IMG/VR virus record: IMGVR_UViG_3300050120_000152
Coordinates: 186,001-250,000 of that record
Direction: 5' to 3' (one strand)
Length of the DNA: 64,000 nucleotides
Part shown: in pieces, positions 24,612 to 64,000 of the stretch
Layout of the letters: the number at the start of each line of letters is the position of its first letter
Numbering within the stretch: the stretch's first letter is position 1
Made by a program: the position numbers and the translations under genes
Notes under the pieces: generated by a model
The model's database searches: none
Told to the model about the DNA's origin: nothing
Seen by the model: the letters and a program-made list of their open reading frames with translations, nothing else

Positions 24612-24612
24612 C

Positions 24613-34002: not shown

Positions 34003-34011
34003 ATAGTTTCC

Positions 34012-36594: not shown

Positions 36595-37125
36595 TTAGGC
36601 TGAAGTAATGAAATTCTCATAATTTTCAATGAGAGAATATCGTATCGCATAATAATATGGAATGTCATAAATTATGATTTCACTGTTAGTTGCTAATCCT
36701 TCTATAAGATTATCAAATGTATATTGGTACTTAAGAACTTCCTTGAAAATTTTAAGACCTTTTTCACCATAATTTTCGATTAATGTAGCTAGAGTTGTCT
36801 TATATACTTCAGTAGTATTAGCCACATTTTCTGCAAACAAAAATTTATATCCATTTATCGGAAATATATAAAATGGTTCAACTTCATCACTGCAAACGGG
36901 AATGAATGAGTTCATTCCATGTGCAAATATTGAACGTTCCATCAAATTCGAATGATTATTGAATGTTTCATTGAAGGCTTCGATCAGAACATTTTGCTGT
37001 TTCTTCTTTTTTCTAACCTTTACTTTTCTAAACCCATGGTTATCCACTGGCAAATTTTTTAGTAATGGAAATCCGTTGGATTCTTGTAGAAACTGGGAGC
37101 ATTCTTCGGTGATAGTTGGTAGCAT
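36595..37125 (-). CDS. conserved jumbo-phage hypothetical protein
   Basis: 176-aa ORF; RKVKVRKKK; FYIFPINGYKF. Confidence 0.7.
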   Translation of the reverse strand: MLPTITEECSQFLQESNGFPLLKNLPVDNHGFRKVKVRKKKKQQNVLIEAFNETFNNHSNLMERSIFAHGMNSFIPVCSDEVEPFYIFPINGYKFLFAENVANTTEVYKTTLATLIENYGEKGLKIFKEVLKYQYTFDNLIEGLATNSEIIIYDIPYYYAIRYSLIENYENFITSA

Positions 37126-37178
37126 TTATACACTCTTAAAATTATCTAAATATATCGTATTAATTGCGATGTATTTAG

Positions 37179-37829
37179 ATGATGAATGATACCAAAATGC
37201 GAGATGGAATGCAACGATTTTATAATGAAGTCTCGGGTAGAGAAGTTTTCGTTATAGGTGGAGGCCCAAGCTTCCAATATGTTGACAAAAAAATGTTGGA
37301 AGGTAAATTGGTAGTATGTATAAACACTGCCTATAAAGAATTTAATAATCCTACTGCTTTATATTGGTGTGATGAAAGTTGGGTTGCTAATCATTATGAT
37401 AACATTATGAAGCATCAATGTCCATTACGGTTTACCGCTAGACATGCGGCAGATGGTCATATAACTAAAAATATTTTGGGAACTGGCAATAGCATTGTCT
37501 TGAAACGTACTGGTGATTTTGGTATAGACACTGATTTTAATCATGTTAAAGGAAATAATAGTGGCGCACATGTTATAAATTTGTTAGCTAATATGAAGGT
37601 TAGACGCATTATTTTATTGGGCTACGATTTAACCATGTCAAAAGGTAAATCTCATTGGCATGATGGACATGGATTACCTATGGCAAATCATATTTACAAT
37701 GAGTTATTTATCCCATGCTTGAATAGCATGGCAGATCCCTTGAAGAATTTAAAAATAGATATTGTAAATTGTTCGGTAGGCACTGCATTGAAATGTTTCA
37801 GAGAAGATAAATTGGAAAATTATGTATGA
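37179..37829 (+). CDS. Maf/CstII-like (GT42/DUF115 fold) putative nonulosonate transferase
   Basis: VIGGGPSF, CIN, NSGAH.INL...IILLGYD, HWH. Confidence 0.65.
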   Translation: MMNDTKMRDGMQRFYNEVSGREVFVIGGGPSFQYVDKKMLEGKLVVCINTAYKEFNNPTALYWCDESWVANHYDNIMKHQCPLRFTARHAADGHITKNILGTGNSIVLKRTGDFGIDTDFNHVKGNNSGAHVINLLANMKVRRIILLGYDLTMSKGKSHWHDGHGLPMANHIYNELFIPCLNSMADPLKNLKIDIVNCSVGTALKCFREDKLENYV

Positions 37830-38560
37830 TATCGTGTCTAATAGTAAATTTAAATTGTGCTAAACACACAGAAAATTTAATAAAAGATTTAGAACGTCAA
37901 ACTTATAATAATTTTGATATAACTGTAGTTGACCAAAATTCTACCGAACCATACACAAAAATATTATTAAATTCATTAACTTTTTCTGGTTATAATATAA
38001 TTAAAAATTCCTATAACAAACCACTAAATCTTATTTGGAATGAATTTATACGTAATTCTAAAAATGAATATTGTTCTTTTTTAAATAATGATATTCGTAT
38101 ACCGTATAATTTTCTCGATAATACCAAAACCATTCTTGATATTGAACCTAGCGTATCATGCGTAATTCATCCTACCAATCATCCGAATTGGTTTAAAACA
38201 CGTAAAATATTATCATATGATATACTAGATGATAGAACTCGCCAAGGATGGGATTTTACGTTTCGTAAGTCTCATTGGACAAATATTCCAAAATGTTTAG
38301 ATTTTTATTGCGGAGATGATTTTATTTTCGAAAATATTTACAATAATGATCATAAAGTTGCTATGGCAACCAGTTCACCTGTTATACATTTATTAGGTCA
38401 AACTAGAAAAAGCCCGTTAAATACTATTATACCTAATCGGAATCCTATTAAAGATATTGAAGAATATAAAAAATTAGGATACCGACACTACTTAAATGTG
38501 CTGGATAAATATTCGAAAATAGAACCTGAAATAGCCAAAATTTTTGAGGAAATCGAATGA
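37826..38560 (+). CDS. GT2-family glycosyltransferase
   Basis: VVDQNST, FLNNDI, YCGDDFI. Confidence 0.8.
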   Translation: MISCLIVNLNCAKHTENLIKDLERQTYNNFDITVVDQNSTEPYTKILLNSLTFSGYNIIKNSYNKPLNLIWNEFIRNSKNEYCSFLNNDIRIPYNFLDNTKTILDIEPSVSCVIHPTNHPNWFKTRKILSYDILDDRTRQGWDFTFRKSHWTNIPKCLDFYCGDDFIFENIYNNDHKVAMATSSPVIHLLGQTRKSPLNTIIPNRNPIKDIEEYKKLGYRHYLNVLDKYSKIEPEIAKIFEEIE

Positions 38561-39021
38561 ATATAGAAATAATTAAAGAACATAATGTTAGAATAGATGA
38601 TACGGTAAAAATTATTGGTACTGGAAAACTAATTTTACATTCTGGTGTACAAATTCGATCTTTCACCGTCATCGAATTAGATGGTGAATTAGAAATTGGG
38701 GAACGAAGCGTACTAGGTTATCATAACTTCGTTCAATGTTCGGGGACATGTAAGATCGGTGCTGGCACATTAATAGGCCCAAGTACAATATTATTAGCAT
38801 CTAGCCACCAAATAACGGATATTCCTCTAATTGAGGAACAAATACTTAAAAGCACTTTAATAATCGGAAATAATGTGTGGATTAGCGCTAATTGTACTAT
38901 CAATCATGGTATAATTTTAAACGATAACTGTATCGTTGCAGCAAATAGTTTTGTAAATAAAACTGTAGAGCGCAATGCTATTGTCGGAGGTTCACCAGCC
39001 AAATTTATACGGTATAGATAA
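38557..39021 (+). CDS. hexapeptide-repeat sugar O-acetyltransferase
   Basis: Left-handed beta-helix repeats; IGNNVWI, VAANSFV, VGGSPAKFI. Confidence 0.9.
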   Translation: MNIEIIKEHNVRIDDTVKIIGTGKLILHSGVQIRSFTVIELDGELEIGERSVLGYHNFVQCSGTCKIGAGTLIGPSTILLASSHQITDIPLIEEQILKSTLIIGNNVWISANCTINHGIILNDNCIVAANSFVNKTVERNAIVGGSPAKFIRYR

Positions 39022-39974
39022 TGAATTTTTTATTTACTGTAGCACTTAATAATGATAATGGCGATAATTATAAAACTATTATGCAATTATTTCGAGATTT
39101 AGCGTTAACCTTAAATAGTATAGGCCATAACACTTTTATATTATCGCATCCTGCTGCATATATGCAATATGATCTGTATTCGACAGTATATCAAACGGAA
39201 ACATTAACTATAGATAATTACAATGAAATAATGGGTCATGTTGGGTTTAAGCCAGATTATGCATTTATATGGAATGGCAATACAATAAATGATACCAAAA
39301 CTATTACATTATTAAAATCTAATGGAATAAAAATTATTTATGGTGAGTTGGGATTTTTAAATCATTTTAATCAAACCTGTTATTTCGATTTAAGTGGAGT
39401 AAATTGTAGAATATCTGATATATCGTCTAAGCTTGATATGCACGATTTAAGTAAAGAAGAGAATGCTGAATTAACTCGATTATGCAACGATCATATTAAA
39501 CCACGATTGGTGGAAACTCCGTATATATTCATACCATTACAAATAGAATCAGATACTCAAATAACAAAATATTCACCCTTTAAAACGATGGATGAATTAT
39601 TAGAATATGTTACAGATATATTTAAAAATGATACTCGGCTTATATTGTATAAGCATCATCCAATGAAACGATCCATTACTAAACAATATGATAAAATTGT
39701 AGAAGTGAGTAATGATGTACATCATTACATTCCATATGCTGATGTGGTTGTCGGAATAAATTCTACCGTATTAACCGAAACATTAATATATCATAATAGA
39801 TTAATTAGTTTGGGTGCTGGTATAACATCAAAACAGTTTGTACATGATAATCAACGAAAACGATATATTTTACAGTTGAATAATAAACAATTGAATTGGT
39901 CAGATTTAGCGGATGTCTCAAAAATCGAAAATTCATATTTTTATCAACAAATCTTAAAGGATTATACGCGATGA
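39021..39974 (+). CDS. KpsS/KpsC-like capsular polysaccharide protein (putative beta-Kdo transferase fold)
   Basis: YGELGF, FDLSGVN, FIPLQIESDTQI, YKHHP, GINSTV..E. Confidence 0.7.
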   Translation: MNFLFTVALNNDNGDNYKTIMQLFRDLALTLNSIGHNTFILSHPAAYMQYDLYSTVYQTETLTIDNYNEIMGHVGFKPDYAFIWNGNTINDTKTITLLKSNGIKIIYGELGFLNHFNQTCYFDLSGVNCRISDISSKLDMHDLSKEENAELTRLCNDHIKPRLVETPYIFIPLQIESDTQITKYSPFKTMDELLEYVTDIFKNDTRLILYKHHPMKRSITKQYDKIVEVSNDVHHYIPYADVVVGINSTVLTETLIYHNRLISLGAGITSKQFVHDNQRKRYILQLNNKQLNWSDLADVSKIENSYFYQQILKDYTR

Positions 39975-40669
39975 ATGGGATAAAATGGTCGAAAATCGAA
40001 AAACCCGGTAAGCATAATACTGTCATTATTGTGTGCACTGGCCCAAGTTTAAAAAACTATGATTTTACTAAATTAAAAGAGATGGGTTATATTATTGCAG
40101 TCAACGATGCGGGCAAATTTTTACCATTTGCAGATGCTTGGTTTACTTTAGACCCGTGGGGCTGTGGCATTAGGGGTGCACAATTTCCGGCAGGGTTTCA
40201 TGGAGATATGTATGCTGCTGTGCCAGAAGCTTTTGGACTAGGTTCAGCAAGAAATTTGGCACATAGAGTTGAGGCACATCCACAAATCAATTATTTGCAT
40301 CGCATCCCCTTTCATTCTATTTCCGCCCATCAATTAACGGATTATGATTATTTACATTGGGGATTAAATGAAGACCCCGGTTCAATCAATACTGGAAATT
40401 CTGGTTATGGTGCGCTAAATATGGCTTATCATATGCGCCCTAAAAACATTATATTACTTGGGCTGGATGGCACAAAAGGATATTTTTATGATGCTGGTAA
40501 AGTTACTAGAAGTTTACATCATTTACCTAAAATATTCTCTTCTGCTGTACCACAACTGAATGCAGCAGGTATAGAGGTTATTAATGGCAGTCAATTTTCT
40601 ACCGTATCATGTTTTAACCGATGTAATTTGAATAGCGTAAATAAAAAATTGAGAGAATTAAATGGATAA
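39971..40669 (+). CDS. second Maf/CstII-like protein
   Basis: CTGPSL, AVND, NSGYGALNMA...IILLGLD; ATG overlaps the upstream stop. Confidence 0.65.
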   Translation: MNGIKWSKIEKPGKHNTVIIVCTGPSLKNYDFTKLKEMGYIIAVNDAGKFLPFADAWFTLDPWGCGIRGAQFPAGFHGDMYAAVPEAFGLGSARNLAHRVEAHPQINYLHRIPFHSISAHQLTDYDYLHWGLNEDPGSINTGNSGYGALNMAYHMRPKNIILLGLDGTKGYFYDAGKVTRSLHHLPKIFSSAVPQLNAAGIEVINGSQFSTVSCFNRCNLNSVNKKLRELNG

Positions 40670-41921
40670 GCTTGAAATATTTTTAGATGATATATTAGCA
40701 ATCAATGGTTCTCTAATAGATTTTAGAATATATGATACGAGTCGATTTACAACACTTATAACGCGAACATCATCTACAAATAAAAAAGTTTATGGGCTAG
40801 ATACATTTTGTGGGTTAGATAAGCCTAATATATATGATTTACTAAACCCTAATCATGGTGATATAAGCGAAGGTAAATATATAATTCAAAATGTGTTTCG
40901 GCCTAACAATAGTCGCATTATAATTAAAAAAACCAACCATTATAACGATCTTGACACTATTATACCAGAAGATGAACGTTTTTGTTTTGCTCTTCTTGAT
41001 CTTAAACAATTTTCTTCCACGGAAAAGGTATTGCAATTCATTTGGGATAAAATGTCATATGGCGGGACTTTATATGTTTATGATTATGATTCAACTGCCA
41101 ATCATTCCAGTTCATATGCCATATCCCATTTTATAAAAAAATATGACAAGTATCTTAATATATCTCGCCAGATGGTAGTAGATGGAAATCGAGAGAAATT
41201 TATTGCAATAAAATGTTTTAACCCTTTAATGAAACCTATTCTACAAACAGAAGCCGTTCCCCGTGAAAAAGTAACTATTGCGATGGTGCTTAAAACTGGT
41301 GGAAAAATATATGATTATAATTATGTTAATGCTTTAGCTAAAGGCTTGAAGAAGAATCTGACTATAAATCATGAAATCGTCTGTTTAACTGACGATGCAA
41401 CTGGATTTTCGAATGATATAGATCGAGTTATCCTTTTAGCCAATGATTACCCTACATGGTGGAGTAAAATCGAATTATTTAAGGAAGGTCAGTTTGATAC
41501 CAAGCACGTTTTTTATTTGGATTTGGATACTATTGTTGTTGATAATATTGATGAAATTGTATCATACAATAGTAAATTTAGTGGTCTTCGTGATTTTTAT
41601 GGATTACATTCTCTTGGAAGTGGATTAATGTCTTGGAATACTGATTACGTCAAGCAAATATACACAAATTTCGCGCCAATAGCTAAAACCGTCATGGCTA
41701 CTTATCGTGCAGGTGATCAAAAATGGATTGATGAGCAAAAACCGTCTATCGATTATTTTCAGGATAGGTTTCCTAATGAAATATTATCTTATAAGCGTCA
41801 TTGCGTAGACTCGACTAATAACGTTTCTATACCTTCTACAGCTAAAATTATATGCTTTCACGGCAATCCTAGACCGCATACAGTAAAACATCCAAGCATC
41901 ATGCTACATTGGCAACCATAA
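40662..41921 (+). CDS. TylF-like methyltransferase fused to a GT-A glycosyltransferase
   Basis: N: YGLDTFCGL, FALLDL, GGTLYVYDY; C: WWSKIELF, YLDLD, DQKWI, CFHGNPRP. Confidence 0.75.
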   Translation: MDKLEIFLDDILAINGSLIDFRIYDTSRFTTLITRTSSTNKKVYGLDTFCGLDKPNIYDLLNPNHGDISEGKYIIQNVFRPNNSRIIIKKTNHYNDLDTIIPEDERFCFALLDLKQFSSTEKVLQFIWDKMSYGGTLYVYDYDSTANHSSSYAISHFIKKYDKYLNISRQMVVDGNREKFIAIKCFNPLMKPILQTEAVPREKVTIAMVLKTGGKIYDYNYVNALAKGLKKNLTINHEIVCLTDDATGFSNDIDRVILLANDYPTWWSKIELFKEGQFDTKHVFYLDLDTIVVDNIDEIVSYNSKFSGLRDFYGLHSLGSGLMSWNTDYVKQIYTNFAPIAKTVMATYRAGDQKWIDEQKPSIDYFQDRFPNEILSYKRHCVDSTNNVSIPSTAKIICFHGNPRPHTVKHPSIMLHWQP

Positions 41922-41957
41922 GCATAAATAATGCATAATGATCGTTTCGGATAGATA

Positions 41958-44198
41958 ATGGCAACTATAACATATAAATGCAACATATGTGAAAGAAATA
42001 TTGATTTACTTGAAAATCCAATAGGACTAACCACATTTTCTAAATGTGTTATTACATACGGCTGCAAAGGTAAAATGTTATCGGTAAAACGTAATCAAGA
42101 TAATATCCGCGAAACTTTTCCCGTTGAAGTTCCGGGATTGATAGATTATAGTCCGCGTAACGTTCTATCAAACTTCAATCAAGTTATCCCGCTAACTACA
42201 TGGGTCATTACACACAATTTAAATACCATTCCGGTGGTAACAGTGTTTGTAGATAATACCACTGGTACGCAAACTGAGCTAAATCCTACTCAATTTACGG
42301 TTATTCCTATAAATTCTAATCAATTGAAAGTAGTGTTTACGACTGCATATAGTGGCTCGATACAATTGATTTCGAGAAATTCTATAAAAGTTAATCCAAC
42401 TATTGCAGCAGCACCTACTATATTAACACAAGTAACCTCTAATGGAAATTTTGTATTTGCTGTTCCAAAATATTTAACGAAATTTTCGTATCCACCTACA
42501 GTATTACCTGCTCCGGGGTTACCTTATGATTTAGCTTCTACCAAATTGAGAATAGAAGTGAGTATCCAGAAACCAAACGAAGAGACAATTGTTTGCACTG
42601 AATTTTTAAGCACTGATCTTAGTGGAACACCTTGGAATAGTTGGAATAGTATTTTAGTAAGAAAAAGAAAAAATTACTATCTATTTGCTATCAATATATT
42701 AAATTTTAGAACTTTTGGTGGTAATACTACACAATTTAACGATATTCCAGATGGAACCCGTTTACAAATAACCAGAGTAGATTATGGTACTGGTGTATTA
42801 CAACCAGTCGATACCGAAGGTTTATTTATTATGTTATCAAACTCGCCTTATACCATTAATGATAAAATAAAAGATTCAATTGTTGATGTTGGTGATATGG
42901 TAGATAATAATATTAATTATTTTACTTATAACACATCAGATTTTTTTGTCGATCCATCAAATGTAGATAGGACATATCCTGATATTAGTAAGGTAAATCC
43001 TGTAATCCCAGTAATTGCCCCCTTACCATCAATAACACCAACTATAACGCCATCAATAACCATAACACCATCAGTAACTTTAACACCACAGGTCACTCCT
43101 ACACCTACTCCTTCACCAATACCTTATAATTTACCCCCATATTTGGCTGAACTTAACTCTGATGGTACACCAGATACACATTTCATAGATAAACAATTAG
43201 ATTCTCATATGTATGTTTCATATGAAACTTCTGATGGTCATATCTACTTCGGCGGGGATACATCCACGTCCATTCCCGGTAATTATTCTTACCTAGGGCG
43301 TCTAAATTCTGATGGATCAATAGATACTACATTTACCAACTATAATTTAGATTATGATGTTGAAACAATATATCAAACTGCTGATGGTCACATTTATATA
43401 GGTGGAAACTTTTCCACGTTTAATGGTATATCTGTACGCGGATTTGTTCGATTAAATTCTGATGGATCATTTGATAGCACATTCGCTGGTGGGTGCGATG
43501 GTGATGTTATCACGATATGCCAAACTTTAGATGGTCATATTTATGTTGGCGGTGCTTTTAACACTATATGTGGAGCTTCATATAATGGTATTGCTCGACT
43601 ATCTGCAACAGGGGTAATTGATAGCACATTTATAGCACCAGTGTCAAGTTCTATATCAGTAAATTGCATCATACAAACTATTGATACCAATATTTATGTT
43701 TGTAATGCCTCCAATCCCACTACATATACTAATTTTTGTAGGTTGACTTCTGCTGGTATACTAGATACGTCTTTCACTGATTTGACGATTGATAATATAG
43801 TCAAGGTGGCATATCAAACTTCTGATGGATCGATCTACATTGGTGGCAGTTTTAATAATGTAGGAGGGTATTCCTACCCCAAGCTCGCCAAACTAAATTC
43901 GGATGGCACCATTAACAATGCATTTGCATTATCTAAACCCCAAGTAATATCAAATATAGAAATTTTTGGAGTAATATCAACTACCTATGTATACGCTATT
44001 ATGCAGGCTATTGATAGTAAAATTTATATAGGTAGTGACAACGTCTACATAAATGGAAATTCTTATACATATTTTAGTAGATTAAACTCTGATGGATCAT
44101 TTGATAATACATTCAATTCATTGAATTTAACTGGTAGTGTATATAATATTAATAAAATATCCTCTGGGGATATCTACATTTCTGGTGCATTTAATTAA
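41958..44198 (+). CDS. structural protein: CxxC N-domain/HNL module/TP linker/7 Delta-60 (DUF5122) repeats
   Basis: YKCNIC..KCVITYGCKG; W.ITHNL; 7x RLNSDG-type repeats. Confidence 0.8.
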   Translation: MATITYKCNICERNIDLLENPIGLTTFSKCVITYGCKGKMLSVKRNQDNIRETFPVEVPGLIDYSPRNVLSNFNQVIPLTTWVITHNLNTIPVVTVFVDNTTGTQTELNPTQFTVIPINSNQLKVVFTTAYSGSIQLISRNSIKVNPTIAAAPTILTQVTSNGNFVFAVPKYLTKFSYPPTVLPAPGLPYDLASTKLRIEVSIQKPNEETIVCTEFLSTDLSGTPWNSWNSILVRKRKNYYLFAINILNFRTFGGNTTQFNDIPDGTRLQITRVDYGTGVLQPVDTEGLFIMLSNSPYTINDKIKDSIVDVGDMVDNNINYFTYNTSDFFVDPSNVDRTYPDISKVNPVIPVIAPLPSITPTITPSITITPSVTLTPQVTPTPTPSPIPYNLPPYLAELNSDGTPDTHFIDKQLDSHMYVSYETSDGHIYFGGDTSTSIPGNYSYLGRLNSDGSIDTTFTNYNLDYDVETIYQTADGHIYIGGNFSTFNGISVRGFVRLNSDGSFDSTFAGGCDGDVITICQTLDGHIYVGGAFNTICGASYNGIARLSATGVIDSTFIAPVSSSISVNCIIQTIDTNIYVCNASNPTTYTNFCRLTSAGILDTSFTDLTIDNIVKVAYQTSDGSIYIGGSFNNVGGYSYPKLAKLNSDGTINNAFALSKPQVISNIEIFGVISTTYVYAIMQAIDSKIYIGSDNVYINGNSYTYFSRLNSDGSFDNTFNSLNLTGSVYNINKISSGDIYISGAFN

Positions 44199-44221
44199 TA
44201 AATAACATAAAAGAACACATC

Positions 44222-46471: not shown

Positions 46472-46490
46472 TTATAATATAAATTTTATA

Positions 46491-46565
46491 CAATTAGTAG
46501 GTTACATTGTGTCACCAAATATCATATATATTAATTTTGGTAAACAATATACCAAGTATCAATAA
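46491..46565 (+). pseudogene. intergenic relic of the 3' end of the INFRQGI anchor domain
   Basis: QLVGYIVSPNIIYINFGKQYTKYQ* vs QLVGYIVSPNTIYVNFNNQYSKYI at 45101; first 23 bp identical. Confidence 0.75.
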
Positions 46566-46640
46566 GATAAATAGCTTATCATCCTATAAACCGTATGAAG
46601 TCGTATAAATATTCCATTGAATATATATTTGGAATCATGA

Positions 46641-48797: not shown

Positions 48798-48849
48798 TGA
48801 CTTATTAAATACATAAACCAATAAATACTATGATAAAACTATTGCCATT

Positions 48850-51800
48850 ATGCTTATAAATTTTCGTCAAGGCATCATAAATGCTCAAATAAACAATAAT
48901 TTCCTTCAATTGGTTAATGGAAATGTAAACATTAATGTTGATGTAGATAGAGTGGATTTAGCTTTTGCTTATGGTAATCATAACTATTTGTTTACAGAAG
49001 CACAGCAGGTATTAAGTGCATGGAACGGATTACCGTCAAATCAAACAGCCTACTTGTATTGGGATATAGACTTAATTTCTGGTATCAGAACTTATGGATT
49101 TACCGTCGTAGCCCCAAGTTTCGGTGGTCAATATCCAAGCTCGCCATTAATTAATCAACATTTTTTTAATTATACTACCAATAAAATGTATGTATGGTCA
49201 GGTACCATTTGGCAAGAAAAATTAAGAGTATTTGCTGGCTCAGTGCAAGACAATGCCATATTAGTAGCAAATGGCTTAGGATCACAAGTTAATTTATATG
49301 GTCAGGTTAATTTGGGCTATATTCTATTCAATTCCCAGAATAAACCGTTAAGAATAACCGATAATACAAATATATTTTATTTCGTTACTACCGAAGATGA
49401 AATTCATACCCAACAAGATTTAAATAATGCATATAAAATTGATGCATTATTGATGGATGGTAGAGCCATAGAACCAATCCCAGCATTTTCTTGTATTACA
49501 TGGAAAGGCCCAAAGCAAACTGGTGTAGCATCCTATGTTGATTATCAGCGACCATGTATAGGCATAGCTGCGGAATCATCTGGTGTGGATGAAGTTAAAC
49601 AATTCGTAACCAAAGGATTTTTAACAAATTATATAAATTGGAACTTTGATGTTCCACCAAGCACACCATTATTTGTAGGGATTACGGGACAAGTTACTAC
49701 TAGTGTACCCCAACAGTATTCATTGCAGCGCATAGGTCATGTGGTATCACCAAATACCATATTTGTAAATATTGAAGAAATAATATTATTAGAATCATTT
49801 CAAACAACCCCAACTCCAACTCCATCATCTTCCCCTACCCCAACATTGACACCATCACCTACACCAAGTGTTACACCCACGGCAACTCCAGTAATACCAT
49901 CAGGATTTTCGTTATATGCTGGGGGAGCGATGAGCAATGTTGGTGGTATATTAGGAATAGATTCGTTGAATGCTGATGGAACATTAAACACAGCATTTAC
50001 CAATTTGCAAGTTGATGGTTATGTTGATTATATGTATCAAACAGCTGATACAAAAATCTATACGCTAGGTTCCTTTACTTCTATAGGTTCTCATTATTTT
50101 CCAACTTTTGCTAGATTAAATTCTGATGGAACTTTCGATACAACATTTACTGCTATAACATTCAATAGTGAACCATTAGATATGCACCAAACTGCTGATG
50201 GTAAAATATACCTTGTGGGAAATTTTTCGGAGGTTGAGGGTGATACGACAACTTATACGAATGGCTTGGTTAGATTAAATAGCGACGGTACATTAGATAC
50301 ATCCTATACGCCTCCAACATTTGGTACGTTTCCATATCTATCCACATTATATCAAACAGCTGATGGTAAAATTTATATCGGCGGCACTTTTACTACTACA
50401 GTCGATGGAAATAATTACAATAGCTTGATTAGATTAAATGCTGATGGTACATTAGATACATCTTTCACTAATTTATTATTAGATAATGACGTTTCCAAAG
50501 TTTACCAAATATCATCTGGTAAAATATATATTGCTGGAGATTTCACCACTGTTGGTGGAAACAGCTATAGTAACCTAGCTAGATTAAATTCTGATGGAAC
50601 TGTCGATACGACATTTACTGCTATAACATTTAACAACCCCGTATATTCAGTATACCAAACTATTGATAATAAAATTTATGTTGTTGGTAGTTTTACTACT
50701 CTAAATGGAAATACTTTCCAAAATTTGGCTAGATTAAATTCTGATGGTACAGTGGATAGTACAATAGGTAATTTACAATTAGCAGGTCAGGCTTATAATG
50801 TCACACAAACCGCTGATGGTAAGATATATGTAGGTGGTAATATTGTACAATCAGTAATCGGTACGGCTGGTGTATATAATATGGTAAGACTTAATTCCGA
50901 TGGAACTTATGATAACACGTTTATCGATTCCTTAAAATTTAGTGGTACTATTAATAATATATTACAAATAAGTAATGGCACTATATATGTTGCTAGTAAT
51001 GGAATGGCACAAGCATATAATAATATGGTTAGATTATTTAGTTCTGGTACAGTAGACATAACATTTACTGAGTTGGGACTTCAACAAACTTATGGTGAAG
51101 TAGATGCCCTATTACGCTCTCATGTTGATAATAAAATATATATGGGCGGACAATTTATGCAGGTAGAAGCCTTAAATTATAGAAGTTTAGCTAGATTAAA
51201 TGCTGATGGTACATTAGATACATCATATACTAATTATGATATTATAGGTGGTGTACTTGATCTGTATCAAACTGTTGATGATAAAATTTATGTCAGCGGC
51301 AACTTTAATAGTGTTGGTGGCGCTACTTACAATTATCTTGCACGATTAAATGCTGATGGTACATTAGATACTAGTATGGTAGATTTAGCATTAAATAATA
51401 TTGTAAATTCTATATATCAAACTATTGATAATAAAATTTATGTCGGTGGCGGTTTTGATAGCAGCAGTACAGTTGGTTTTAATAGTTTAAATAGATTAAA
51501 TTCTGATGGAACATTAGATACAACATTTATAGATGTCGCTTTTCCGGCAGACTATTCCATTTACTATATTACACAAACATTAGACGGTAAAATTTATGTG
51601 GGGGGACAATTTTCTACAGTTGGGGTTTCAACGTATAATCATCTTGCACGACTGAATTCTGATGGAACGTTAGATACAACATTTACAGACTTAGGGTTAA
51701 ATGGTAATGTATTCGCAATATACCAAACTGTTGATGGTAAAATTTATATCGGTGGAGATTTCGTTGCTGGTGGAGCTAATACGTATGACTATATATTACG

Positions 51801-52002
51801 ACTAAATTCTGATGGAACATTAGATACAACATTTATAGGTGGTGGGATAAGTAGTGGTATACGAGTGCTACAACAATCTACAAGTGGAAAATTATTGATA
51901 GGTAGACATTCTGCGATAGAACTGTATAATTCTGATGGAACTTTTGATAGTGATATTATAACTAGTAATGGTAACATCATGGCACTATTGATTAATAATT
52001 AA
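48850..52002 (+). CDS. fibre/spike-like protein: 'INFRQGI' N-domain/TP linker/14 Delta-60 repeats
   Basis: 14 RLN[SA]DG-type repeats; ATAAATA upstream. Confidence 0.85.
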   Translation: MLINFRQGIINAQINNNFLQLVNGNVNINVDVDRVDLAFAYGNHNYLFTEAQQVLSAWNGLPSNQTAYLYWDIDLISGIRTYGFTVVAPSFGGQYPSSPLINQHFFNYTTNKMYVWSGTIWQEKLRVFAGSVQDNAILVANGLGSQVNLYGQVNLGYILFNSQNKPLRITDNTNIFYFVTTEDEIHTQQDLNNAYKIDALLMDGRAIEPIPAFSCITWKGPKQTGVASYVDYQRPCIGIAAESSGVDEVKQFVTKGFLTNYINWNFDVPPSTPLFVGITGQVTTSVPQQYSLQRIGHVVSPNTIFVNIEEIILLESFQTTPTPTPSSSPTPTLTPSPTPSVTPTATPVIPSGFSLYAGGAMSNVGGILGIDSLNADGTLNTAFTNLQVDGYVDYMYQTADTKIYTLGSFTSIGSHYFPTFARLNSDGTFDTTFTAITFNSEPLDMHQTADGKIYLVGNFSEVEGDTTTYTNGLVRLNSDGTLDTSYTPPTFGTFPYLSTLYQTADGKIYIGGTFTTTVDGNNYNSLIRLNADGTLDTSFTNLLLDNDVSKVYQISSGKIYIAGDFTTVGGNSYSNLARLNSDGTVDTTFTAITFNNPVYSVYQTIDNKIYVVGSFTTLNGNTFQNLARLNSDGTVDSTIGNLQLAGQAYNVTQTADGKIYVGGNIVQSVIGTAGVYNMVRLNSDGTYDNTFIDSLKFSGTINNILQISNGTIYVASNGMAQAYNNMVRLFSSGTVDITFTELGLQQTYGEVDALLRSHVDNKIYMGGQFMQVEALNYRSLARLNADGTLDTSYTNYDIIGGVLDLYQTVDDKIYVSGNFNSVGGATYNYLARLNADGTLDTSMVDLALNNIVNSIYQTIDNKIYVGGGFDSSSTVGFNSLNRLNSDGTLDTTFIDVAFPADYSIYYITQTLDGKIYVGGQFSTVGVSTYNHLARLNSDGTLDTTFTDLGLNGNVFAIYQTVDGKIYIGGDFVAGGANTYDYILRLNSDGTLDTTFIGGGISSGIRVLQQSTSGKLLIGRHSAIELYNSDGTFDSDIITSNGNIMALLINN

Positions 52003-52004
52003 TA

Positions 52005-52622
52005 ATGCTATCTAACTATTTCTCGCATTTATATTGTATAAATTTAGATAATAGACCAGATAGATGGGCTGAAACTCTATTAGAATTTAAAAAATATAAT
52101 ATACTAAATGTTGAACGAATATCTGCTGTGCAAGGTTCCAAGTTAAAGCGCAACCCATGTATAATGAATAGTGGGCAATGGGGCTTATTATATACATGGA
52201 TCAATATATTAAATGATGCAATAGATAAAGACTATTCATCGATATTAATTATGGAAGATGATATCGTGTTTGCCGAGAATTTTATTGAATTATTTCAAGG
52301 CTATATATCAGAACTCCCTGATGACTGGGATATGGTATATATTGGCGAAGTTACAAAAAGAGGTAAACATGGCTGTCGCAGAATTTCAGATCATATCTCA
52401 AAATTAGATAATACATTGGGACTACATTGTGTTGCCATAAATTATACAATATACAAAACATTGTTAACATTATTAACATCACCCGTAAAGAATGGCGAAG
52501 ACTATTTCTTAGACATGCAACGAACCAAAAAGGTATATGGTATTTTCCCTATATTAGCATATCAGAGAAAATCTTATTCAGATATTGAGAAGCGAGTCGT
52601 AAACTATCATGGATTAGGATAA
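52005..52622 (+). CDS. GT25-family glycosyltransferase
   Basis: CINLDNRPDRW, ERISAV, ILIMEDD, DWDMVYIG, P.LAYQR. Confidence 0.85.
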   Translation: MLSNYFSHLYCINLDNRPDRWAETLLEFKKYNILNVERISAVQGSKLKRNPCIMNSGQWGLLYTWINILNDAIDKDYSSILIMEDDIVFAENFIELFQGYISELPDDWDMVYIGEVTKRGKHGCRRISDHISKLDNTLGLHCVAINYTIYKTLLTLLTSPVKNGEDYFLDMQRTKKVYGIFPILAYQRKSYSDIEKRVVNYHGLG

Positions 52623-52671
52623 AAATCCCGATCATTAATAAATACTAAGATAATAAATTTAGGTTATTTTA

Positions 52672-53463
52672 ATGCAATATATTGATGATATCGAGTTAAT
52701 TGGTGGTTCTATCCATGGGGCCAAAATTGAGAATTTAAATCTTGATCCTGATTTTTTCATTACTGATAGTGGGCGAATATATTTCAATATTAGTGGAACT
52801 AAACTTAGATTAAATAATGGCGTAGAATGGATTGATCTATCTTTACCATCAAACTTTAGCAACTTAATTACTACCTTGGGCGCTAATTGGATTAATACCG
52901 ATTTTACTTTTAATCCAACCGAGTTTAATGCATTAACAAATATTACCGGATTAACCAGCAATGATTCATTATTTGATGTTATTTCACAATTAGATAATGC
53001 CATTAATTCTAATGGGGGTTCAACTCTATTATCATTAAATGATGTAGCAGAAACTACAGTATTGGACGCCGGAGATTTATTATATTATAATGGTGATAAT
53101 TTTACTTTTACTAATATTGATGCCATCATACAAACTTATGGACATATAAATTTTTCAGGATTGGAAGATGTTTCAGTTACTGGAGCTATAGCCAATGATA
53201 TTATTGTCTATGATGGTGCTAATTATGTACCCGCAAATCCATTTTTCTTTGGTACCGACTATTCATCAGTCATAGAACACACTATTATTCATACCCTAGG
53301 CGTACAATTGTGTGGTATAACAGTAATTAATGCAAATACTTTTACTGTTATCAATGATGCAACTATCGTGTTCACTGATATTAACACCGTTGATATAACA
53401 TTACAAATTGCTGCTCCGATATATGTAGTATTGGTATCACCACTACAATTTGGTGGTGGTTAA
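52672..53463 (+). CDS. structural (fibre-associated) protein
   Basis: IENL..DP...GRIYFN; L.DV repeats; C-terminal H.LG module; late promoter upstream. Confidence 0.65.
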   Translation: MQYIDDIELIGGSIHGAKIENLNLDPDFFITDSGRIYFNISGTKLRLNNGVEWIDLSLPSNFSNLITTLGANWINTDFTFNPTEFNALTNITGLTSNDSLFDVISQLDNAINSNGGSTLLSLNDVAETTVLDAGDLLYYNGDNFTFTNIDAIIQTYGHINFSGLEDVSVTGAIANDIIVYDGANYVPANPFFFGTDYSSVIEHTIIHTLGVQLCGITVINANTFTVINDATIVFTDINTVDITLQIAAPIYVVLVSPLQFGGG

Positions 53464-53735
53464 TGTCTAACTTGAACTTCAATACCATTTGAGCATTCAA
53501 TAGAATAAATATCTCCCATAATTCCAATTTTGGCTTGGGTAATATGTTCAGTTGCACCACACAAAGACTGATATTTTTCAATATTTTCAATTTTGGCTGG
53601 ATATTTAATAGTAATACCTAACAATAATCCAATGAATACACCACAAAAAAATGCGAAAATGATTGTTTCTAATTTTTCTGACATGATATTCTCAATATTT
53701 ACCTTCATATTTATCAAACATGATAAATAGTACAT
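53460..53735 (-). CDS. small membrane protein (possible i-spanin/lipoprotein-like)
   Basis: TM helix then two Cys; start uncertain (likely MSEK). Confidence 0.5.
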   Translation of the reverse strand: MYYLSCLINMKVNIENIMSEKLETIIFAFFCGVFIGLLLGITIKYPAKIENIEKYQSLCGATEHITQAKIGIMGDIYSIECSNGIEVQVRH

Positions 53736-53754
53736 ATAACTTGGGATTCTTATT

Positions 53755-54657
53755 ATGTTCTTTAATGTCGGTGATTTAATTTATTATGTGGTTGGTGGCG
53801 CGGTTGATTATGGTGTTTGCACTGCTATCAATTATACTTCTAATGTTGTTGTTAGCTATGTAGTAACAACTCTTGAAACTCCATTTACTCCTACTACAGT
53901 GTTAGTTGCAAATGCATATCCATCAGGATATGGTTTGATTCCAACCATTACCCCAACCCCTTCTCCTTCTATTGGATCAAGTCCAACCCCAACCCCAACT
54001 CATACGGTTACTCCTACTCCATCATCTTCACCAGCAGTACCAGTAAATATTTTTCCAACAGCATTAACAGATTGGACTTCTCCTAATGGTAATACTATTG
54101 CATTAGTTAATGGTGAGTTAGTGTTAACTAGTATATCAGCTGGCCCAACTTTTGTGCCAGCATATTTAGCCACTATTACCGTAAGTGCAAATACTTATTA
54201 TAAATTCTCCTTGAGATTCTTGGAAGGTACTTGTAGAAATGCTAGAATACAAGTATTTGGTAACGATACAGCAGCATTTGAACTTGCTGGCCCTCCTGCA
54301 CCAACAGTGAATGGTACTTTAATTAATAATGGTTATACTGATAGTGGATCAATATCGGCGAAGTTTAATTCAAAAACATCAACTACATTATATGTAGTAG
54401 TTTATTTATATGCTGATTCAAACTTTACGATAGCTGCCCCAACTGGCACAACATATAAAATTGCAGATACCTTCTTGGAACAGGATTATTCATATGTACC
54501 AGTAACACCTACACCATCACCTACAGCATCATTATCAGTAACACCTACCATTTCGGTAACACCATCTATTACAACTTCGATATCAGTAACCCCAACAATA
54601 TCAGTAACACCTACTATAACACCTACTATAACGGTGACACCAACACCAACACACTAA
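53755..54657 (+). CDS. modular surface protein: N-module/TP linker/CBM-like/terminal TP tail
   Basis: CBM-like domain paralogous to the one in 29278..30870 (YKF..RF.EG.C..A.I; LYADSN...AP.G..Y.I). Confidence 0.75.
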   Translation: MFFNVGDLIYYVVGGAVDYGVCTAINYTSNVVVSYVVTTLETPFTPTTVLVANAYPSGYGLIPTITPTPSPSIGSSPTPTPTHTVTPTPSSSPAVPVNIFPTALTDWTSPNGNTIALVNGELVLTSISAGPTFVPAYLATITVSANTYYKFSLRFLEGTCRNARIQVFGNDTAAFELAGPPAPTVNGTLINNGYTDSGSISAKFNSKTSTTLYVVVYLYADSNFTIAAPTGTTYKIADTFLEQDYSYVPVTPTPSPTASLSVTPTISVTPSITTSISVTPTISVTPTITPTITVTPTPTH

Positions 54658-56817: not shown

Positions 56818-56837
56818 ATAGTTTCCCAATTTTTACA

Positions 56838-62034: not shown

Positions 62035-62039
62035 ACCTA

Positions 62040-63743: not shown

Positions 63744-63792
63744 ATTATGATCTTCTTTGGATTAATTATTTATTTATTATACGTGAATTGCG

Positions 63793-63999: not shown

Positions 64000-64000
64000 A

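What the first reader, a model, noticed from the sequence alone, without database searches (positions are those of the whole stretch)
37146..54657. Candidate virion glycan-coat system: capsule-like glycosylation operon fused to mucin-like surface proteins
Seen: a TAAATA-led, tightly coupled run (Maf/CstII-like, GT2, O-acetyltransferase, KpsS-like, Maf/CstII-like, TylF-GT) leads directly into structural genes with long Thr/Ser/Pro tracts, and a GT25 gene sits between them. At least five proteins have such tracts, and 53755 ends in a bare TP tail. More GT genes lie at 61204-64000. Known: TP-rich linkers are typical O-glycosylation sites; Maf proteins put nonulosonic acids on Ser/Thr of flagellins; virion glycosylation is documented in some mycobacteriophages and giant viruses. 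Inference: this phage builds an acetylated/methylated, Kdo- or sialic-like glycan on its own fibres for shielding, host-surface mimicry or protease resistance. An alternative is host-surface or DNA modification.
Basis: partly seen in the sequence, partly recalled or inferred. Interest (0 to 1): 0.88.

Follow-up and report, generated by a model that had tools for sequence, protein, structure and literature searches.

The report
Glycosylation operon heading jumbo-phage fibre genes
A jumbo phage carries a conserved operon of sugar-transferring enzymes directly in front of its fibre genes, whose proteins contain long threonine/proline stalks, so the phage probably sugar-coats its own fibres, which is rare in phages and still unproven here.

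Summary
Window 37179-41921 is six overlapping genes for soluble enzymes: a Maf/CstII-fold protein, GT2, a hexapeptide acetyltransferase, a KpsC/S-like protein, a second Maf/CstII-fold protein, and a TylF-fold/GT8 fusion. They run straight into fibre-type genes. Five of those genes carry Thr/Pro/Ser tracts, and a GT25 gene starts 3 nt after one fibre gene.

The window belongs to a 340-kb contig related to the cultured jumbo phages XacN1 and Xoo-sp13. In 20 lineages, a core of the two Maf-like genes (one lineage lacks the second) and the GT8 gene sits between ribonucleotide reductase and the same fibre N-module. In XacN1, Xoo-sp13 and L104 the tail-sheath genes follow. A T4-late-like TAAATA box heads the operon in 14 of 15 loci. 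One fibre module is homologous to a proven neck fibre of cyanophage A-1(L). XacN1 virions show Schiff-positive protein bands.

Caveats: five lineages keep the enzyme core with no TP tract nearby. No sugar-nucleotide synthesis gene was found. The methyltransferase domain looks degenerate. Nothing shows a glycan on any protein.

Verdict: fibre glycosylation is the best-supported reading (about 0.5) and a new variant of phage virion glycosylation.

The parts
36595..37125 (-). Conserved 176-aa gene of unknown function, divergent from the enzyme operon
   Evidence: A homologue sits in the same position in 28 fetched loci, including XacN1 and Xoo-sp13. No Pfam or PHROG hit.
37146..37152 (+). CTAAATA box, T4-late-promoter-like, 33 nt upstream of the first enzyme gene
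   Evidence: [C/A]TAAATA lies 18-33 nt upstream of the orthologous start in 14 of 15 loci, although the rest of the spacer differs. Several loci read TATAAATA.
37179..37829 (+). Maf/CstII-fold protein A (P1 PmgO-like), core gene
   Evidence: PHROG 4603 at E 6e-39; Pfam MptE-like below its cut-off. The family profile hits CstII at E about 1e-3. Present in all 20 lineages.
37826..38560 (+). GT2 glycosyltransferase, variable cassette
   Evidence: Pfam GT2 at 38.6 bits. Present only in the window, L010, L011, L012, L102 and the unrelated L034.
38557..39021 (+). Hexapeptide-repeat sugar O-acetyltransferase, variable cassette
   Evidence: Pfam Hexapep at 47.8 bits. NCBIfam WcaF/WbbJ-like, below the equivalog cut-offs. 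Same distribution as the GT2 gene.
39021..39974 (+). KpsC/KpsS-like (Capsule_synth) protein, variable cassette
   Evidence: Pfam PF05159 at 30.7 bits against a cut-off of 20, partial coverage. PDB KpsC only at E 0.43. Present in the window, L010, L012 and L034.
39971..40669 (+). Maf/CstII-fold protein B (P1 PmgP-like), core gene
   Evidence: PHROG 2111 at E 3e-45. The AF2 model's best PDB match is Maf 5MU5 (E 1.2e-5, TM 0.59), followed by MptE and sialyltransferases. tblastn hits P1 pmgP and P7 hdmC.
40662..41921 (+). Fusion of a TylF-fold domain (residues 1-195) and a GT8 glycogenin-like domain (205-419), core gene
   Evidence: Fold search: glycogenin at E 4.5e-9; SpnH and NovP at E about 3e-7, rmsd 3.1-3.3. 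Profile against the Skp1 alpha-GalT at E 6.5e-8. D287-L-D289 is invariant. Pfam TylF hits the orthologues in L104, L105 and L107.
41958..44198 (+). Fibre protein 1: 4-Cys N-module (1-350), TP tract (nt 43011-43133), DUF5122 beta-propeller
   Evidence: The N-module follows the enzyme core in 20 of 20 lineages. In L104 it sits directly before gp15 and the sheath. ATAAATA lies 34 nt upstream.
44222..46471 (+). Fibre protein 2: gp82C-like N-module (1-320), TP tract (nt 45185-45397), DUF5122 propeller
   Evidence: A perfect 60-bp tandem duplication lies inside the tract at 45251-45385.
46641..48797 (+). Fibre protein 3: N-terminal TP tract, small conserved domain, second TP tract, DUF285 (BspA-like) repeats
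   Evidence: Pfam DUF285 at 673 bits. Tracts. TATAAATA lies 36 nt upstream. A perfect 51-bp duplication lies at 46650-46758.
48850..52002 (+). Fibre protein 4: gp82C-like N-module, TP tract (nt 49801-49899), large DUF5122 propeller array
   Evidence: All 18 homologues with at least 36% identity carry a TP tract right after residue ~315. The 10 more distant homologues carry none.
52005..52622 (+). GT25 glycosyltransferase, coupled to fibre gene 4
   Evidence: Pfam GT25 at 32.4 bits; PHROG 2835. Starts 3 nt after the fibre stop. No homologue in any related locus fetched.
52672..53463 (+). Conserved 263-aa protein of the fibre module, function unknown
   Evidence: Orthologues occupy the same position in L010, L015, L019, L028, L031 and L102. 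No PDB, Pfam or PHROG hit.
53460..53735 (-). Small conserved ORF closing the module on the opposite strand
   Evidence: Orthologues in L010, L013, L019, L028, L031, L035 and L102. No family hit.
53755..54657 (+). 300-aa protein with an internal TP tract and a 53-residue TP tail running to the stop codon
   Evidence: Its middle domain is conserved in L010 and L102. Other cluster proteins in relatives also end in TP tails (L010, L018, L020, L030, L103).
29278..30870 (-). Sixth TP-tract protein of the window (TP tract 74-111, PKD-like region, DUF285), outside the cluster
   Evidence: Homologues in L010, L011 and L012 also carry TP tracts.
62040..63743 (-). HtrL/YibB-domain protein; possible further glycan enzyme, link to the cluster uncertain
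   Evidence: Pfam PF09612 at 63.4 bits. In L016/L106 and L035 its orthologue lies 1-6 kb from the fibre N-module. In L106 it sits next to a PF11397 GlcNAc-transferase gene.

Best explanation
This is the fibre gene cluster of an uncultivated XacN1-like jumbo myophage. It is headed by an operon of soluble, phage-encoded glycan-building enzymes that modify the phage's own fibre proteins in the host cytoplasm before or during assembly.

Shown:
- The enzyme families, and a fixed core (two Maf-like genes, one lineage lacking the second, plus GT8) next to the fibre N-modules across a deep clade.
- A variable middle cassette, and a late-promoter-like leader.
- Fibre identity for one module, and Schiff-positive virion proteins in a cultured relative.

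Inferred:
- The two Maf/CstII-fold proteins put a first sugar on Ser/Thr. Those families typically use CMP-activated 8- or 9-carbon keto-acid sugars such as Kdo or nonulosonates, which here would be taken from host pools.
- The GT8 domain and the cassette enzymes (GT2, KpsC/S-like, GT25) extend the glycan, and the acetyltransferase decorates it.
- The uncharged Thr/Pro/Ser tracts (45% hydroxyl residues) form an extended mucin-like stalk. It links a trimeric N-terminal anchor to distal binding domains (DUF5122 propellers, DUF285 repeats). These tracts are the bulk acceptor sites where present.
- The core enzymes also have an acceptor in the conserved N-modules, because they persist where tracts are absent.
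- The swappable cassette would give related phages different glycans, much as O-antigen loci do in bacteria.
For: 1. Enzyme identities.
2. None of the 13 cluster proteins has a membrane segment. The six enzyme genes overlap by 1-8 nt.
3. Synteny. RNR, the 36595 homologue, the Maf-like gene(s) plus GT8, then the 41958 N-module occur in 20 of 20 lineages at 31-68% identity; one lineage (L030) lacks the second Maf-like gene. These include XacN1 and Xoo-sp13, where large TP-rich proteins, gp15 and the tail sheath follow. In L104 the N-module is followed directly by gp15 and the sheath.
4. The N-module of 44222/48850 is homologous to A-1(L) neck-fibre gp82 (E 6e-11). That protein is a trimeric virion protein by MS and cryo-EM (PMC10966104). 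The C-termini of homologues vary (Laminin_G_3, phage tail repeat, collagen, propeller), as in receptor-binding fibres.
5. TP tracts sit in fibre ORFs within 5 kb of the core in 15 of 20 lineages. The rate is about 0.6% of ORFs around stand-alone GT8 genes of other phages. Tracts persist from 30% to about 50% GC. Several proteins end in bare TP tails that link nothing.
6. GT25 is coupled to a fibre gene.
7. A conserved TAAATA leader occurs in 14 of 15 loci, and ATAAATA lies 24-36 nt before every fibre gene. The early-type TGTTATAAT boxes cluster at 1-6200 instead.
8. XacN1 virions show at least two Schiff-stained bands (PMC5852040).
9. The nearest structural relatives act on proteins or protein-bound glycans in the cytoplasm. 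They are Maf (flagellin), glycogenin, the Skp1 alpha-GalT, and the pneumococcal GT8 entry 5gvv. From memory, 5gvv is GlyE of the serine-rich-repeat adhesin pathway.
Against: - No glycan has been observed on any of these proteins. The XacN1 bands were not identified, and its authors credited two other GTs (ORF328 and ORF334).
- Five lineages (L016/L106, L019, L031, L035, L104) keep the core with no TP tract nearby, so the core does not need the tracts.
- TP-linker fibres also sit 40 kb or more from any GT, next to gp15, in the same genomes.
- The Maf-like proteins are about a third the size of Maf, score below the Pfam cut-off, and share their fold with the MptE kinase.
- No sugar-nucleotide synthesis gene was found.
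- The TAAATA box also precedes non-structural genes, such as 26405 and 34012.
- The synteny counts are not phylogenetically independent.
- P1 pmgO and pmgP, which belong to the same family, are dispensable and have no known function.
Confidence: 0.5

Rival explanations
1. The enzymes remodel host envelope glycans (LPS core, O-antigen or capsule) during infection. This could block superinfection or stop progeny sticking to debris. The TP tracts would be plain, unglycosylated flexible spacers.
For: GT2, WcaF-like acetyltransferase, Capsule_synth, GT25 and HtrL/YibB are all families best known from LPS and capsule loci. PHROG files the GT8 and GT25 families as 'moron/auxiliary'. The GT2-AcT-KpsC-like block also occurs in an unrelated 21-kb phage contig with no TP proteins (L034). 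Stand-alone GT8 homologues occur in at least 572 viral contigs with no TP tracts nearby. Five lineages have the core but no tracts.
Against: The core holds a fixed, co-oriented position at the head of the fibre/tail module over deep divergence. It has a late-type leader. There is no initiating transferase, flippase, polymerase or exporter, and no membrane segment. GT25 is coupled to a fibre gene. XacN1 virions contain glycoproteins.
Confidence: 0.2
2. The operon does glycosylate virion proteins, but the acceptors are other parts: the conserved 4-Cys N-module, the capsid, the sheath or neck proteins. The TP tracts stay bare and serve as extended spacers. They also act as recombination joints for swapping distal domains.
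For: The 41958 N-module, not the TP tract, is the universal partner of the core (20 of 20 against 15 of 20). The tracts sit exactly at the joint between the conserved N-module and variable C-termini. They contain perfect DNA duplications. Their length ranges from about 20 to about 600 residues between orthologues.
Against: Proteins that end in TP tails have nothing to space or swap. Tracts of several hundred uncharged Thr/Pro residues would be an odd bare structure on a particle.
Confidence: 0.15
3. The enzymes hypermodify phage DNA with sugars, as T-even glucosyltransferases do. Their position next to the nucleotide-metabolism genes would then be the meaningful neighbourhood.
For: The operon is flanked by ribonucleotide reductase (32878-36456) and a ThyX-type thymidylate synthase (54719-55699). 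Phage GTs are classically DNA modifiers, as reviewed in PMC12619734.
Against: None of the family and fold searches on these enzymes returned a DNA glycosyltransferase. The hits were Maf, CstII, GT8, GT2, GT25 and KpsC-like. No dCMP or dUMP hydroxymethylase was seen; the synthase scores as ThyX, weakly. In XacN1 and L104 the operon reads into tail genes.
Confidence: 0.05
4. The two small 'Maf-like' proteins are not glycosyltransferases. They would be MptE-type nucleotide-dependent kinases or assembly factors, and only the GT8 and cassette enzymes handle sugars.
For: The second-best fold hit is the MptE pyrophosphokinase (E 6e-4), and Pfam names the domain MptE-like. Scores are below Pfam's cut-off. 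The P1 homologues are annotated only as putative morphogenetic proteins.
Against: The best fold hit is Maf. Three different sialyltransferase families also appear in the PDB and viral fold lists, and the profile hits CstII over 150 residues. These proteins are always operon partners of a bona fide GT.
Confidence: 0.1

Closest known systems
Virion glycosylation in mycobacteriophages (Freeman et al. 2023, Cell Host Microbe; known to me through its citation in PMC12619734; the paper itself is not held)
   Same: Phage-encoded glycosyltransferases modify the phage's own structural proteins. Glycans sit on terminal extensions of those proteins, comparable to the bare C-terminal TP tails here.
   Different: Those are actinobacterial siphophages, and the acceptors are the capsid and tail-tube C-termini. 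Here the phage is a jumbo myophage with fibre proteins, Maf/CstII-fold and GT8 enzymes, a swappable cassette and mucin-like tracts. Glycosylation is not demonstrated here.
Xanthomonas jumbo phage XacN1 and relatives Xoo-sp13, Stenotrophomonas CM1 and RAS14
   Same: In XacN1 and Xoo-sp13: the same gene order (RNR, small divergent gene, the core of two Maf-like genes plus GT8, TP-rich large proteins), at 36-51% identity for the three core enzymes. XacN1 virions have Schiff-positive bands. CM1 and RAS14 each hold homologues of the second Maf-like protein and of the 41958 N-module about 1.3 kb apart.
   Different: XacN1 and Xoo-sp13 lack the GT2/AcT/KpsC-like cassette and GT25, and the fibre block is directly contiguous with gp15 and the sheath. 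CM1 and RAS14 neighbourhoods were not examined beyond those two hits. The XacN1 authors annotated ORF369-375 as hypothetical, saw no fibres by EM, and attributed glycosylation to ORF328 and ORF334.
Maf (motility accessory factor) flagellin O-glycosylation, e.g. Magnetospirillum Maf, PDB 5MU5
   Same: It is the best structural match of the 39971 protein. It is a cytoplasmic enzyme acting on Ser/Thr of a filament subunit before assembly (established knowledge of the family).
   Different: Maf is about 630 residues with extra domains, against 216-232 here. The match to 5MU5 covers only about a quarter of that chain (TM normalised to the target 0.24). No flagellin or nonulosonate-synthesis gene was found among the window ORFs scanned. 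The Pfam score is below the cut-off.
Serine-rich-repeat adhesin glycosylation in streptococci (GtfA/B plus GT8 enzymes such as GlyE; the pathway is recalled from memory, and PDB 5gvv appears)
   Same: Several soluble GTs, including GT8, are encoded beside a fibrillar surface protein. They O-glycosylate a long, low-complexity hydroxyl-rich stalk in the cytoplasm.
   Different: That is a bacterial system with Ser-rich rather than Thr/Pro-rich repeats, an accessory Sec export system and no Maf-like enzymes. The similarity to GlyE is weak (E 0.007).
Neck fibre gp82-gp81-gp80 of Anabaena myophage A-1(L) (PMC10966104)
   Same: Residues ~197-311 of the 44222/48850 N-module family align with the gp82 C-domain (E 6e-11). 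That is a trimeric 'bead' of a virion fibre encoded away from the other structural genes.
   Different: The gp82 N-domain that docks on the neck was not matched. A-1(L) fibres are chains of globular beads, with no TP tracts or adjacent GTs reported.
P1 PmgO/PmgP and P7 HdmB/HdmC
   Same: This is the same pair of paralogous Maf/CstII-fold proteins, adjacent to each other. In the P1 gene list they follow the baseplate and tail genes.
   Different: Identity is about 32%. The P1 genes are dispensable. No function, GT8 partner or TP-rich neighbour is known.

Membership tests
Maf / MAF_flag10 (Pfam PF01973) flagellin nonulosonate transferases | Domain match at or above Pfam's gathering score | tested here: not met
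   24.0 and 28.8 bits against a cut-off of 34.6. Many homologues do carry a precomputed PF01973 hit.
Maf / MAF_flag10 (Pfam PF01973) flagellin nonulosonate transferases | Sialyltransferase-like central fold shared with Maf | tested here: met
   AF2 model with pLDDT 89. Best PDB hit is 5MU5 (E 1.2e-5, TM 0.59), then MptE and sialyltransferases.
Maf / MAF_flag10 (Pfam PF01973) flagellin nonulosonate transferases | Multi-domain architecture of about 600 residues, and linkage to flagellin or nonulosonate-synthesis genes | tested here: not met
   The proteins are 216 and 232 residues. No flagellin, NeuB/PseI-like or CMP-sugar synthetase gene was found among the window ORFs scanned.
GT42 CstII-type sialyltransferases | Significant sequence-profile match and the catalytic residues | tested here: inconclusive
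   Profile A1 hits CstII at E 0.9-3e-3 over positions 13-166. Catalytic residues were not mapped.
GT8 retaining GT-A glycosyltransferases (glycogenin-like) | GT-A fold with a DxD metal/nucleotide-sugar motif | tested here: met
   Fold hits to glycogenin at E 4.5e-9 and to 6mw5. Profile E 6.5e-8. D287-L-D289 is invariant in 9 orthologues. No Pfam GT8 hit at E<0.01.
TylF-type sugar O-methyltransferases (Pfam PF05711) | TylF fold and family match | tested here: met
   The N-domain matches SpnH, NovP and CalS11 at E about 3e-7, rmsd 3.1-3.3. Pfam TylF is on record for the orthologues in L104, L105 and L107. The window protein itself has no Pfam hit.
TylF-type sugar O-methyltransferases (Pfam PF05711) | Intact glycine-rich SAM-binding loop (motif recalled from memory) | tested here: inconclusive
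   L015 reads E-F-G-I-Y-K-G. The window and its three closest relatives read D-F/L-R-I/V-Y/N-D-T/A/G. L016 and L018 lack most of the domain. Activity is therefore doubtful in this phage.
GT2 | Pfam PF00535 above the cut-off | tested here: met
   38.6 bits against 23.3.
Left-handed beta-helix sugar O-acetyltransferases | Hexapeptide repeats; WcaF/WbbJ-like | tested here: met
   Hexapep at 47.8 bits against 27. NCBIfam WcaF/WbbJ at E 1e-15 but far below the equivalog cut-offs, so the substrate is unknown.
KpsC/KpsS beta-Kdo transferases (Capsule_synth, PF05159) | Full-length family match | tested here: inconclusive
   30.7 bits against 20, but only residues 166-232 match profile positions 145-214 of 310. 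PDB KpsC at E 0.43.
GT25 | Pfam PF01755 above the cut-off | tested here: met
   32.4 bits against 24, covering the N-terminal half of the profile. PHROG 2835 at E 4e-15.
Phage virion glycosylation systems | Phage GT genes contiguous and co-oriented with structural genes | tested here: met
Phage virion glycosylation systems | Glycan covalently attached to a virion protein | not testable with these tools
   The only evidence is indirect: Schiff-positive bands in XacN1 virions, with identities not reported.
A-1(L) gp82-type neck fibre | Homology to the gp82 trimeric C-domain | tested here: met
   Profile A4 positions 197-311 against 8keg residues 129-239, E 6.2e-11.
A-1(L) gp82-type neck fibre | Homology to the neck-docking N-domain of gp82 (residues 1-125) | tested here: not met
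   The match does not extend into residues 1-125. Where the fibre attaches on the virion therefore remains unknown.
T4-type late promoter | TATAAATA about 25-35 nt upstream of the start codon | tested here: inconclusive
   The exact octamer precedes 46641 and 58116. The 7-mer ATAAATA precedes all six fibre-module genes, and CTAAATA heads the operon. The operon-head box is conserved in 14 of 15 loci. The octamer is not over-represented in the window overall: 10 found against 20 expected. No sigma factor or transcript data are available.

The most novel reading that the evidence does not exclude
A whole clade of jumbo myophages, from low-GC uncultivated phages known only from metagenomes to the Xanthomonas and Stenotrophomonas phages, builds mucin-like 'bottle-brush' fibres. 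Minimal Maf-type protein O-glycosyltransferases, fed by host CMP-keto-acid sugars, would densely glycosylate Thr/Pro stalks and terminal tails. A swappable enzyme cassette between the conserved core genes would give each phage its own glycan 'serotype', the viral counterpart of an O-antigen locus.
Probability: 0.35. Interest if true: 0.8.

Novelty: new variant of a known kind. Interest (0 to 1): 0.62.

Why it matters
Self-glycosylation of phage particles is documented for very few phages. There it changes how the particle is recognised by antibodies.

If this cluster works as proposed, a widespread group of 300-kb-class phages would make O-glycosylated, mucin-like fibres with their own enzymes. 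That would bear on three things:
- how such phages stick to hosts, particles or mucus;
- how they resist proteases;
- how fibre diversity evolves, with both the glycan cassette and the distal domains exchanged at the TP joint.

It would also assign a function to the P1 PmgO/PmgP family, which has had none since the P1 genome was annotated. And it would add small stand-alone Maf-fold enzymes to the toolbox for protein glyco-engineering.

The idea is directly testable, because XacN1, Xoo-sp13, CM1 and RAS14 are in culture.

Tried and rejected
- Megablast of the 17.5-kb region against 50,697 phage records found no match. tblastn of the 48850 N-module against the same records also found none.
- Single-sequence PDB searches of 37179 and 39021 gave nothing usable.
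- PDB profile searches of the 4-Cys N-module (A3) and the 52672 family (A5) found no relative. 62040 and 61204 likewise gave nothing.
- The literature gave no function for PmgO/PmgP and nothing on Xoo-sp13, RAS14 or CM1 virions. No paper linked Maf-type enzymes to phages. General searches on phage O-glycosylation returned nothing relevant.
- The 'moraphage' paper (PMC12619734) describes another jumbo lineage with four core GT families, but gives no sign that it is this clade.
- I considered that the TP tracts were a base-composition artefact. I rejected this because they persist in loci of 46-49% GC (L105, L107) as well as at 30-39% GC, and also occur in XacN1 and Xoo-sp13.
- I considered that tracts go with the GT8 family in general. 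I rejected this: the roughly 65 loci with a stand-alone GT8 gene have almost none.
- I considered a strict tract/GT co-dependence. I rejected this because of the five lineages with the core but no tract.
- tRNA and Rfam scans of the window were empty.
- The exhaustive representative-protein search and the metagenome and genome contig scans were not used.

Full report
**What the window is.** The window is part of IMG/VR contig IMGVR_UViG_3300050120_000152, which is 340,344 bp. It encodes a split T4-type topoisomerase II, class I ribonucleotide reductase, a ThyX-like thymidylate synthase and other phage genes. No record in the phage collection is close at the DNA level. At the protein level the nearest cultured phages for the cluster genes are the jumbo myophages Xanthomonas XacN1 (385 kb) and Xoo-sp13 (309 kb), and Stenotrophomonas CM1 and RAS14 (320 kb).

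**The observation.** All the ORFs exist as described.
- The six genes from 37179 to 41921 overlap each other by 1-8 nt, and none of the 13 cluster proteins has a membrane-like segment.
- 37179 matches PHROG 4603 ('alpha-2,3-sialyltransferase', E 6e-39). It matches Pfam MptE-like below the cut-off.
- 37826 is GT2. 38557 is a hexapeptide acetyltransferase of the WcaF/WbbJ type.
- 39021 is a partial but above-threshold Capsule_synth match.
- 39971 matches PHROG 2111 and 4603. 52005 is GT25.
- An AlphaFold model of 39971 (pLDDT 89) has the Maf flagellin glycosyltransferase 5MU5 as its best PDB match (E 1.2e-5). MptE and several sialyltransferases follow, and the family profile hits CstII.
- A model of 40662 (pLDDT 86) splits into two domains. 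The N-domain resembles the TylF-type sugar O-methyltransferases SpnH, NovP and CalS11. The C-domain resembles glycogenin and the Skp1 alpha-galactosyltransferase, with an invariant D-L-D motif. Pfam TylF is on record for its orthologues.

**The tracts.** Five cluster proteins and one protein 6 kb upstream carry tracts of 32-71 residues. Their composition is 32% Thr, 25% Pro, 13% Ser and 22% Ile/Val/Leu, with almost no charged residues. That is six of 82 ORFs, against 0.4 expected by shuffling. The tracts sit between a conserved N-module and a distal domain. The distal domains are DUF5122 propellers in three proteins and DUF285 repeats in one. Tracts also sit at the very N-terminus of 46641 and the very C-terminus of 53755. 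Two tracts contain perfect 51- and 60-bp tandem duplications.

**Are the downstream genes structural?**
- The N-module shared by 44222 and 48850 is a conserved unit of about 315 residues. It is attached to very different C-termini in 27 database relatives: Laminin_G_3, phage tail repeat, collagen, or propellers.
- Its profile matches the C-domain of gp82, the trimeric neck-fibre protein of cyanophage A-1(L), at E 6e-11. That protein is established as a virion component by mass spectrometry and cryo-EM (PMC10966104).
- In related 346-350-kb contigs a second copy lies immediately beside T4 gp15, and in the 346-kb and 175-kb contigs also the tail-sheath gene.
- The 41958 N-module begins with four invariant cysteines. 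In XacN1 and Xoo-sp13 it belongs to large proteins directly upstream of gp15 and the sheath. In L104 a 351-residue N-module-only version lies between the enzyme genes and gp15.

I conclude these are fibre-type virion proteins. Whether they attach at the neck, the sheath surface or the baseplate is not settled.

**Comparative anatomy.** I examined 20 distinct lineages at 31-68% protein identity.
- The order is constant: ribonucleotide reductase, a divergent 170-180-residue gene of unknown function (the 36595 family), Maf-like A, a variable insert, Maf-like B (absent in L030), the GT8 gene, then the 4-Cys N-module.
- The gp82C-like module, the 52672 family and the small reverse ORF (53460 family) often follow.
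- The insert varies. It is GT2 plus acetyltransferase plus the KpsC/S-like gene in the window, L010 and L012. It is GT2 plus acetyltransferase in L011 and L102. It is one unknown ORF in L019, L028 and L031, five unrelated ORFs in L035, and nothing in XacN1, Xoo-sp13 and others.
- The GT2-AcT-KpsC-like block also occurs in an unrelated small contig (L034). There it follows a larger ORF that joins a GT2 domain to a GT8-like domain.
- GT25 has no counterpart in any fetched locus.

The picture is a fixed core with a swappable cassette, as in bacterial surface-glycan loci.

**The link between enzymes and tracts.** TP tracts occur in a fibre ORF within 5 kb downstream of the core in 15 of 20 lineages. 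These include XacN1 and Xoo-sp13, as well as uncultured loci at 46-49% GC. Some reach about 600 residues (L010, L102). In the other five lineages the fibre genes are N-modules only and there is no tract. All 18 close homologues of 48850 have the tract at the same joint, and the 10 distant ones have none. Stand-alone GT8 homologues are common in small phages (at least 572 contigs), but tracts are almost absent around them.

Three points follow:
- The tract is the universal connector whenever these fibres have a distal part.
- It is strongly enriched beside the core.
- The core does not depend on it.

These counts share ancestry and are not independent trials.

**Timing.** Each fibre-module gene has ATAAATA or TATAAATA 24-36 nt before its start. 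The operon has CTAAATA at 33 nt. A [C/A]TAAATA box at 18-33 nt is kept at the operon head in 14 of 15 loci, while the surrounding spacer diverges. Several of those loci show the full T4 late consensus. The window's left end (1-6200) has a different repeated box, TGTTATAAT, in front of many tiny ORFs; it looks like an early region. Late expression of the operon is therefore plausible, but two things weaken it. The same box precedes some non-structural genes, and the octamer is not over-represented overall.

**External evidence.** The XacN1 paper reports at least two Schiff-stained protein bands in purified virions. It does not identify them, attributes them to two other GTs, and annotates ORF369-375 as hypothetical (PMC5852040). 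The Maf-like pair is also the PmgO/PmgP pair of phage P1. Those genes follow the baseplate and tail genes in the P1 gene list, are dispensable, and have no known function. Virion glycosylation is otherwise established for mycobacteriophages (cited in PMC12619734).

**Mechanism proposed.**
- The operon is expressed with the fibre genes.
- Its soluble enzymes O-glycosylate fibre proteins in the cytoplasm. The Maf/CstII-fold proteins act as priming transferases, and GT8, GT2, KpsC/S-like and GT25 act as extenders. The acetyltransferase acts as decorator.
- Donors come from the host, since no sugar-nucleotide synthesis gene was found.
- The donor chemistry (Kdo or nonulosonate) is inferred only from the habits of the Maf, CstII and KpsC families.
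- The TylF-fold domain has lost the two glycines that relative L015 keeps, so methylation is doubtful.
- The TP tracts would be the main acceptor surface where present and would give an extended stalk. The conserved N-modules must hold an acceptor as well, or the core has a second role.

I put about 0.5 on virion-fibre glycosylation and about 0.35 on the tracts being the main acceptors.

**Rivals.** They are:
- host LPS or capsule remodelling with bare linkers (0.2);
- virion glycosylation on other acceptors with bare tracts (0.15);
- the Maf-like proteins not being glycosyltransferases (0.1, which overlaps the others);
- DNA glycosylation (0.05).

**Novelty and score.** Phage self-glycosylation is a known kind. 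What I did not find described in the papers searched is this combination: a conserved minimal Maf-fold pair plus a TylF/GT8 fusion, a swappable cassette, and mucin-like fibres across a jumbo-phage clade. It is a well-founded and directly testable hypothesis, not a demonstrated system. Interest 0.62.

Noticed in passing
window 1-6700: GC is 42-46% here against 30-35% elsewhere. The stretch is packed with ORFs of about 50-170 residues on the + strand. Many are preceded by a repeated TGTTATAATA-type box and a conserved ~25-nt leader. It looks like a sigma-70-driven early-gene region. No Rfam or tRNA hit.
   Followed up: partly
window 5798-5845: A perfect 9-bp tandem repeat (GCCACCATC, about five copies) lies inside the small-ORF region.
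   Followed up: no
window 36595-37125 (-): A 176-residue protein with no family hit is always placed divergently between ribonucleotide reductase and the enzyme operon, in 28 fetched loci including XacN1. It may belong to the system.
   Followed up: partly
window 23298-27622 (-): The T4-type topoisomerase II is split into large (24613-26418) and medium (23298-24611) subunit genes. A 405-residue ORF with weak HNH/homing-endonuclease matches lies immediately upstream (26405-27622).
   Followed up: no
window 18087-20514 (+): An IMPDH/GMP-reductase gene, a NUMOD3-motif (homing-endonuclease-like) ORF and a Thg1-like tRNA-His guanylyltransferase gene lie in a row. The IMPDH and Thg1 genes are also neighbours in L103.
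   Followed up: no
L014, L017, L020 and L031 (ribonucleotide reductase large-subunit region): In several relatives the reductase large-subunit gene is broken into two or three ORFs with extra ORFs between them. In L031 one of these resembles the window's HNH-like ORF. This suggests intein or homing-endonuclease insertions.
   Followed up: no
L106 7291-8430 (-): An IS605 OrfB / Cas12f-like TnpB gene is inserted between the reductase gene and the enzyme operon of one relative.
   Followed up: no
L105 15614-16156 (+): A 180-residue ORF with a weak Mtd_N hit (the tropism determinant of Bordetella phage BPP-1) sits between two TP-rich fibre genes. This hints at diversity-generating machinery. No reverse transcriptase was looked for.
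   Followed up: no
L005 12628-13875 and L006 13300-14355: Just after the second fibre copy, my ORF finder reads a + strand ORF that is almost entirely TP tract. The public gene calls place a gene on the - strand there. Thr/Pro codon repeats read as Gly/Val on the reverse strand, so calls in such tracts are unreliable.
   Followed up: no
window 56278-56829 (-) and 55696-56112 (-): An HslV-like peptidase gene lies beside a 138-residue ORF whose first 33 residues match a 'major head protein' PHROG. Both lie between ThyX and a DNA-polymerase-like gene.
   Followed up: no
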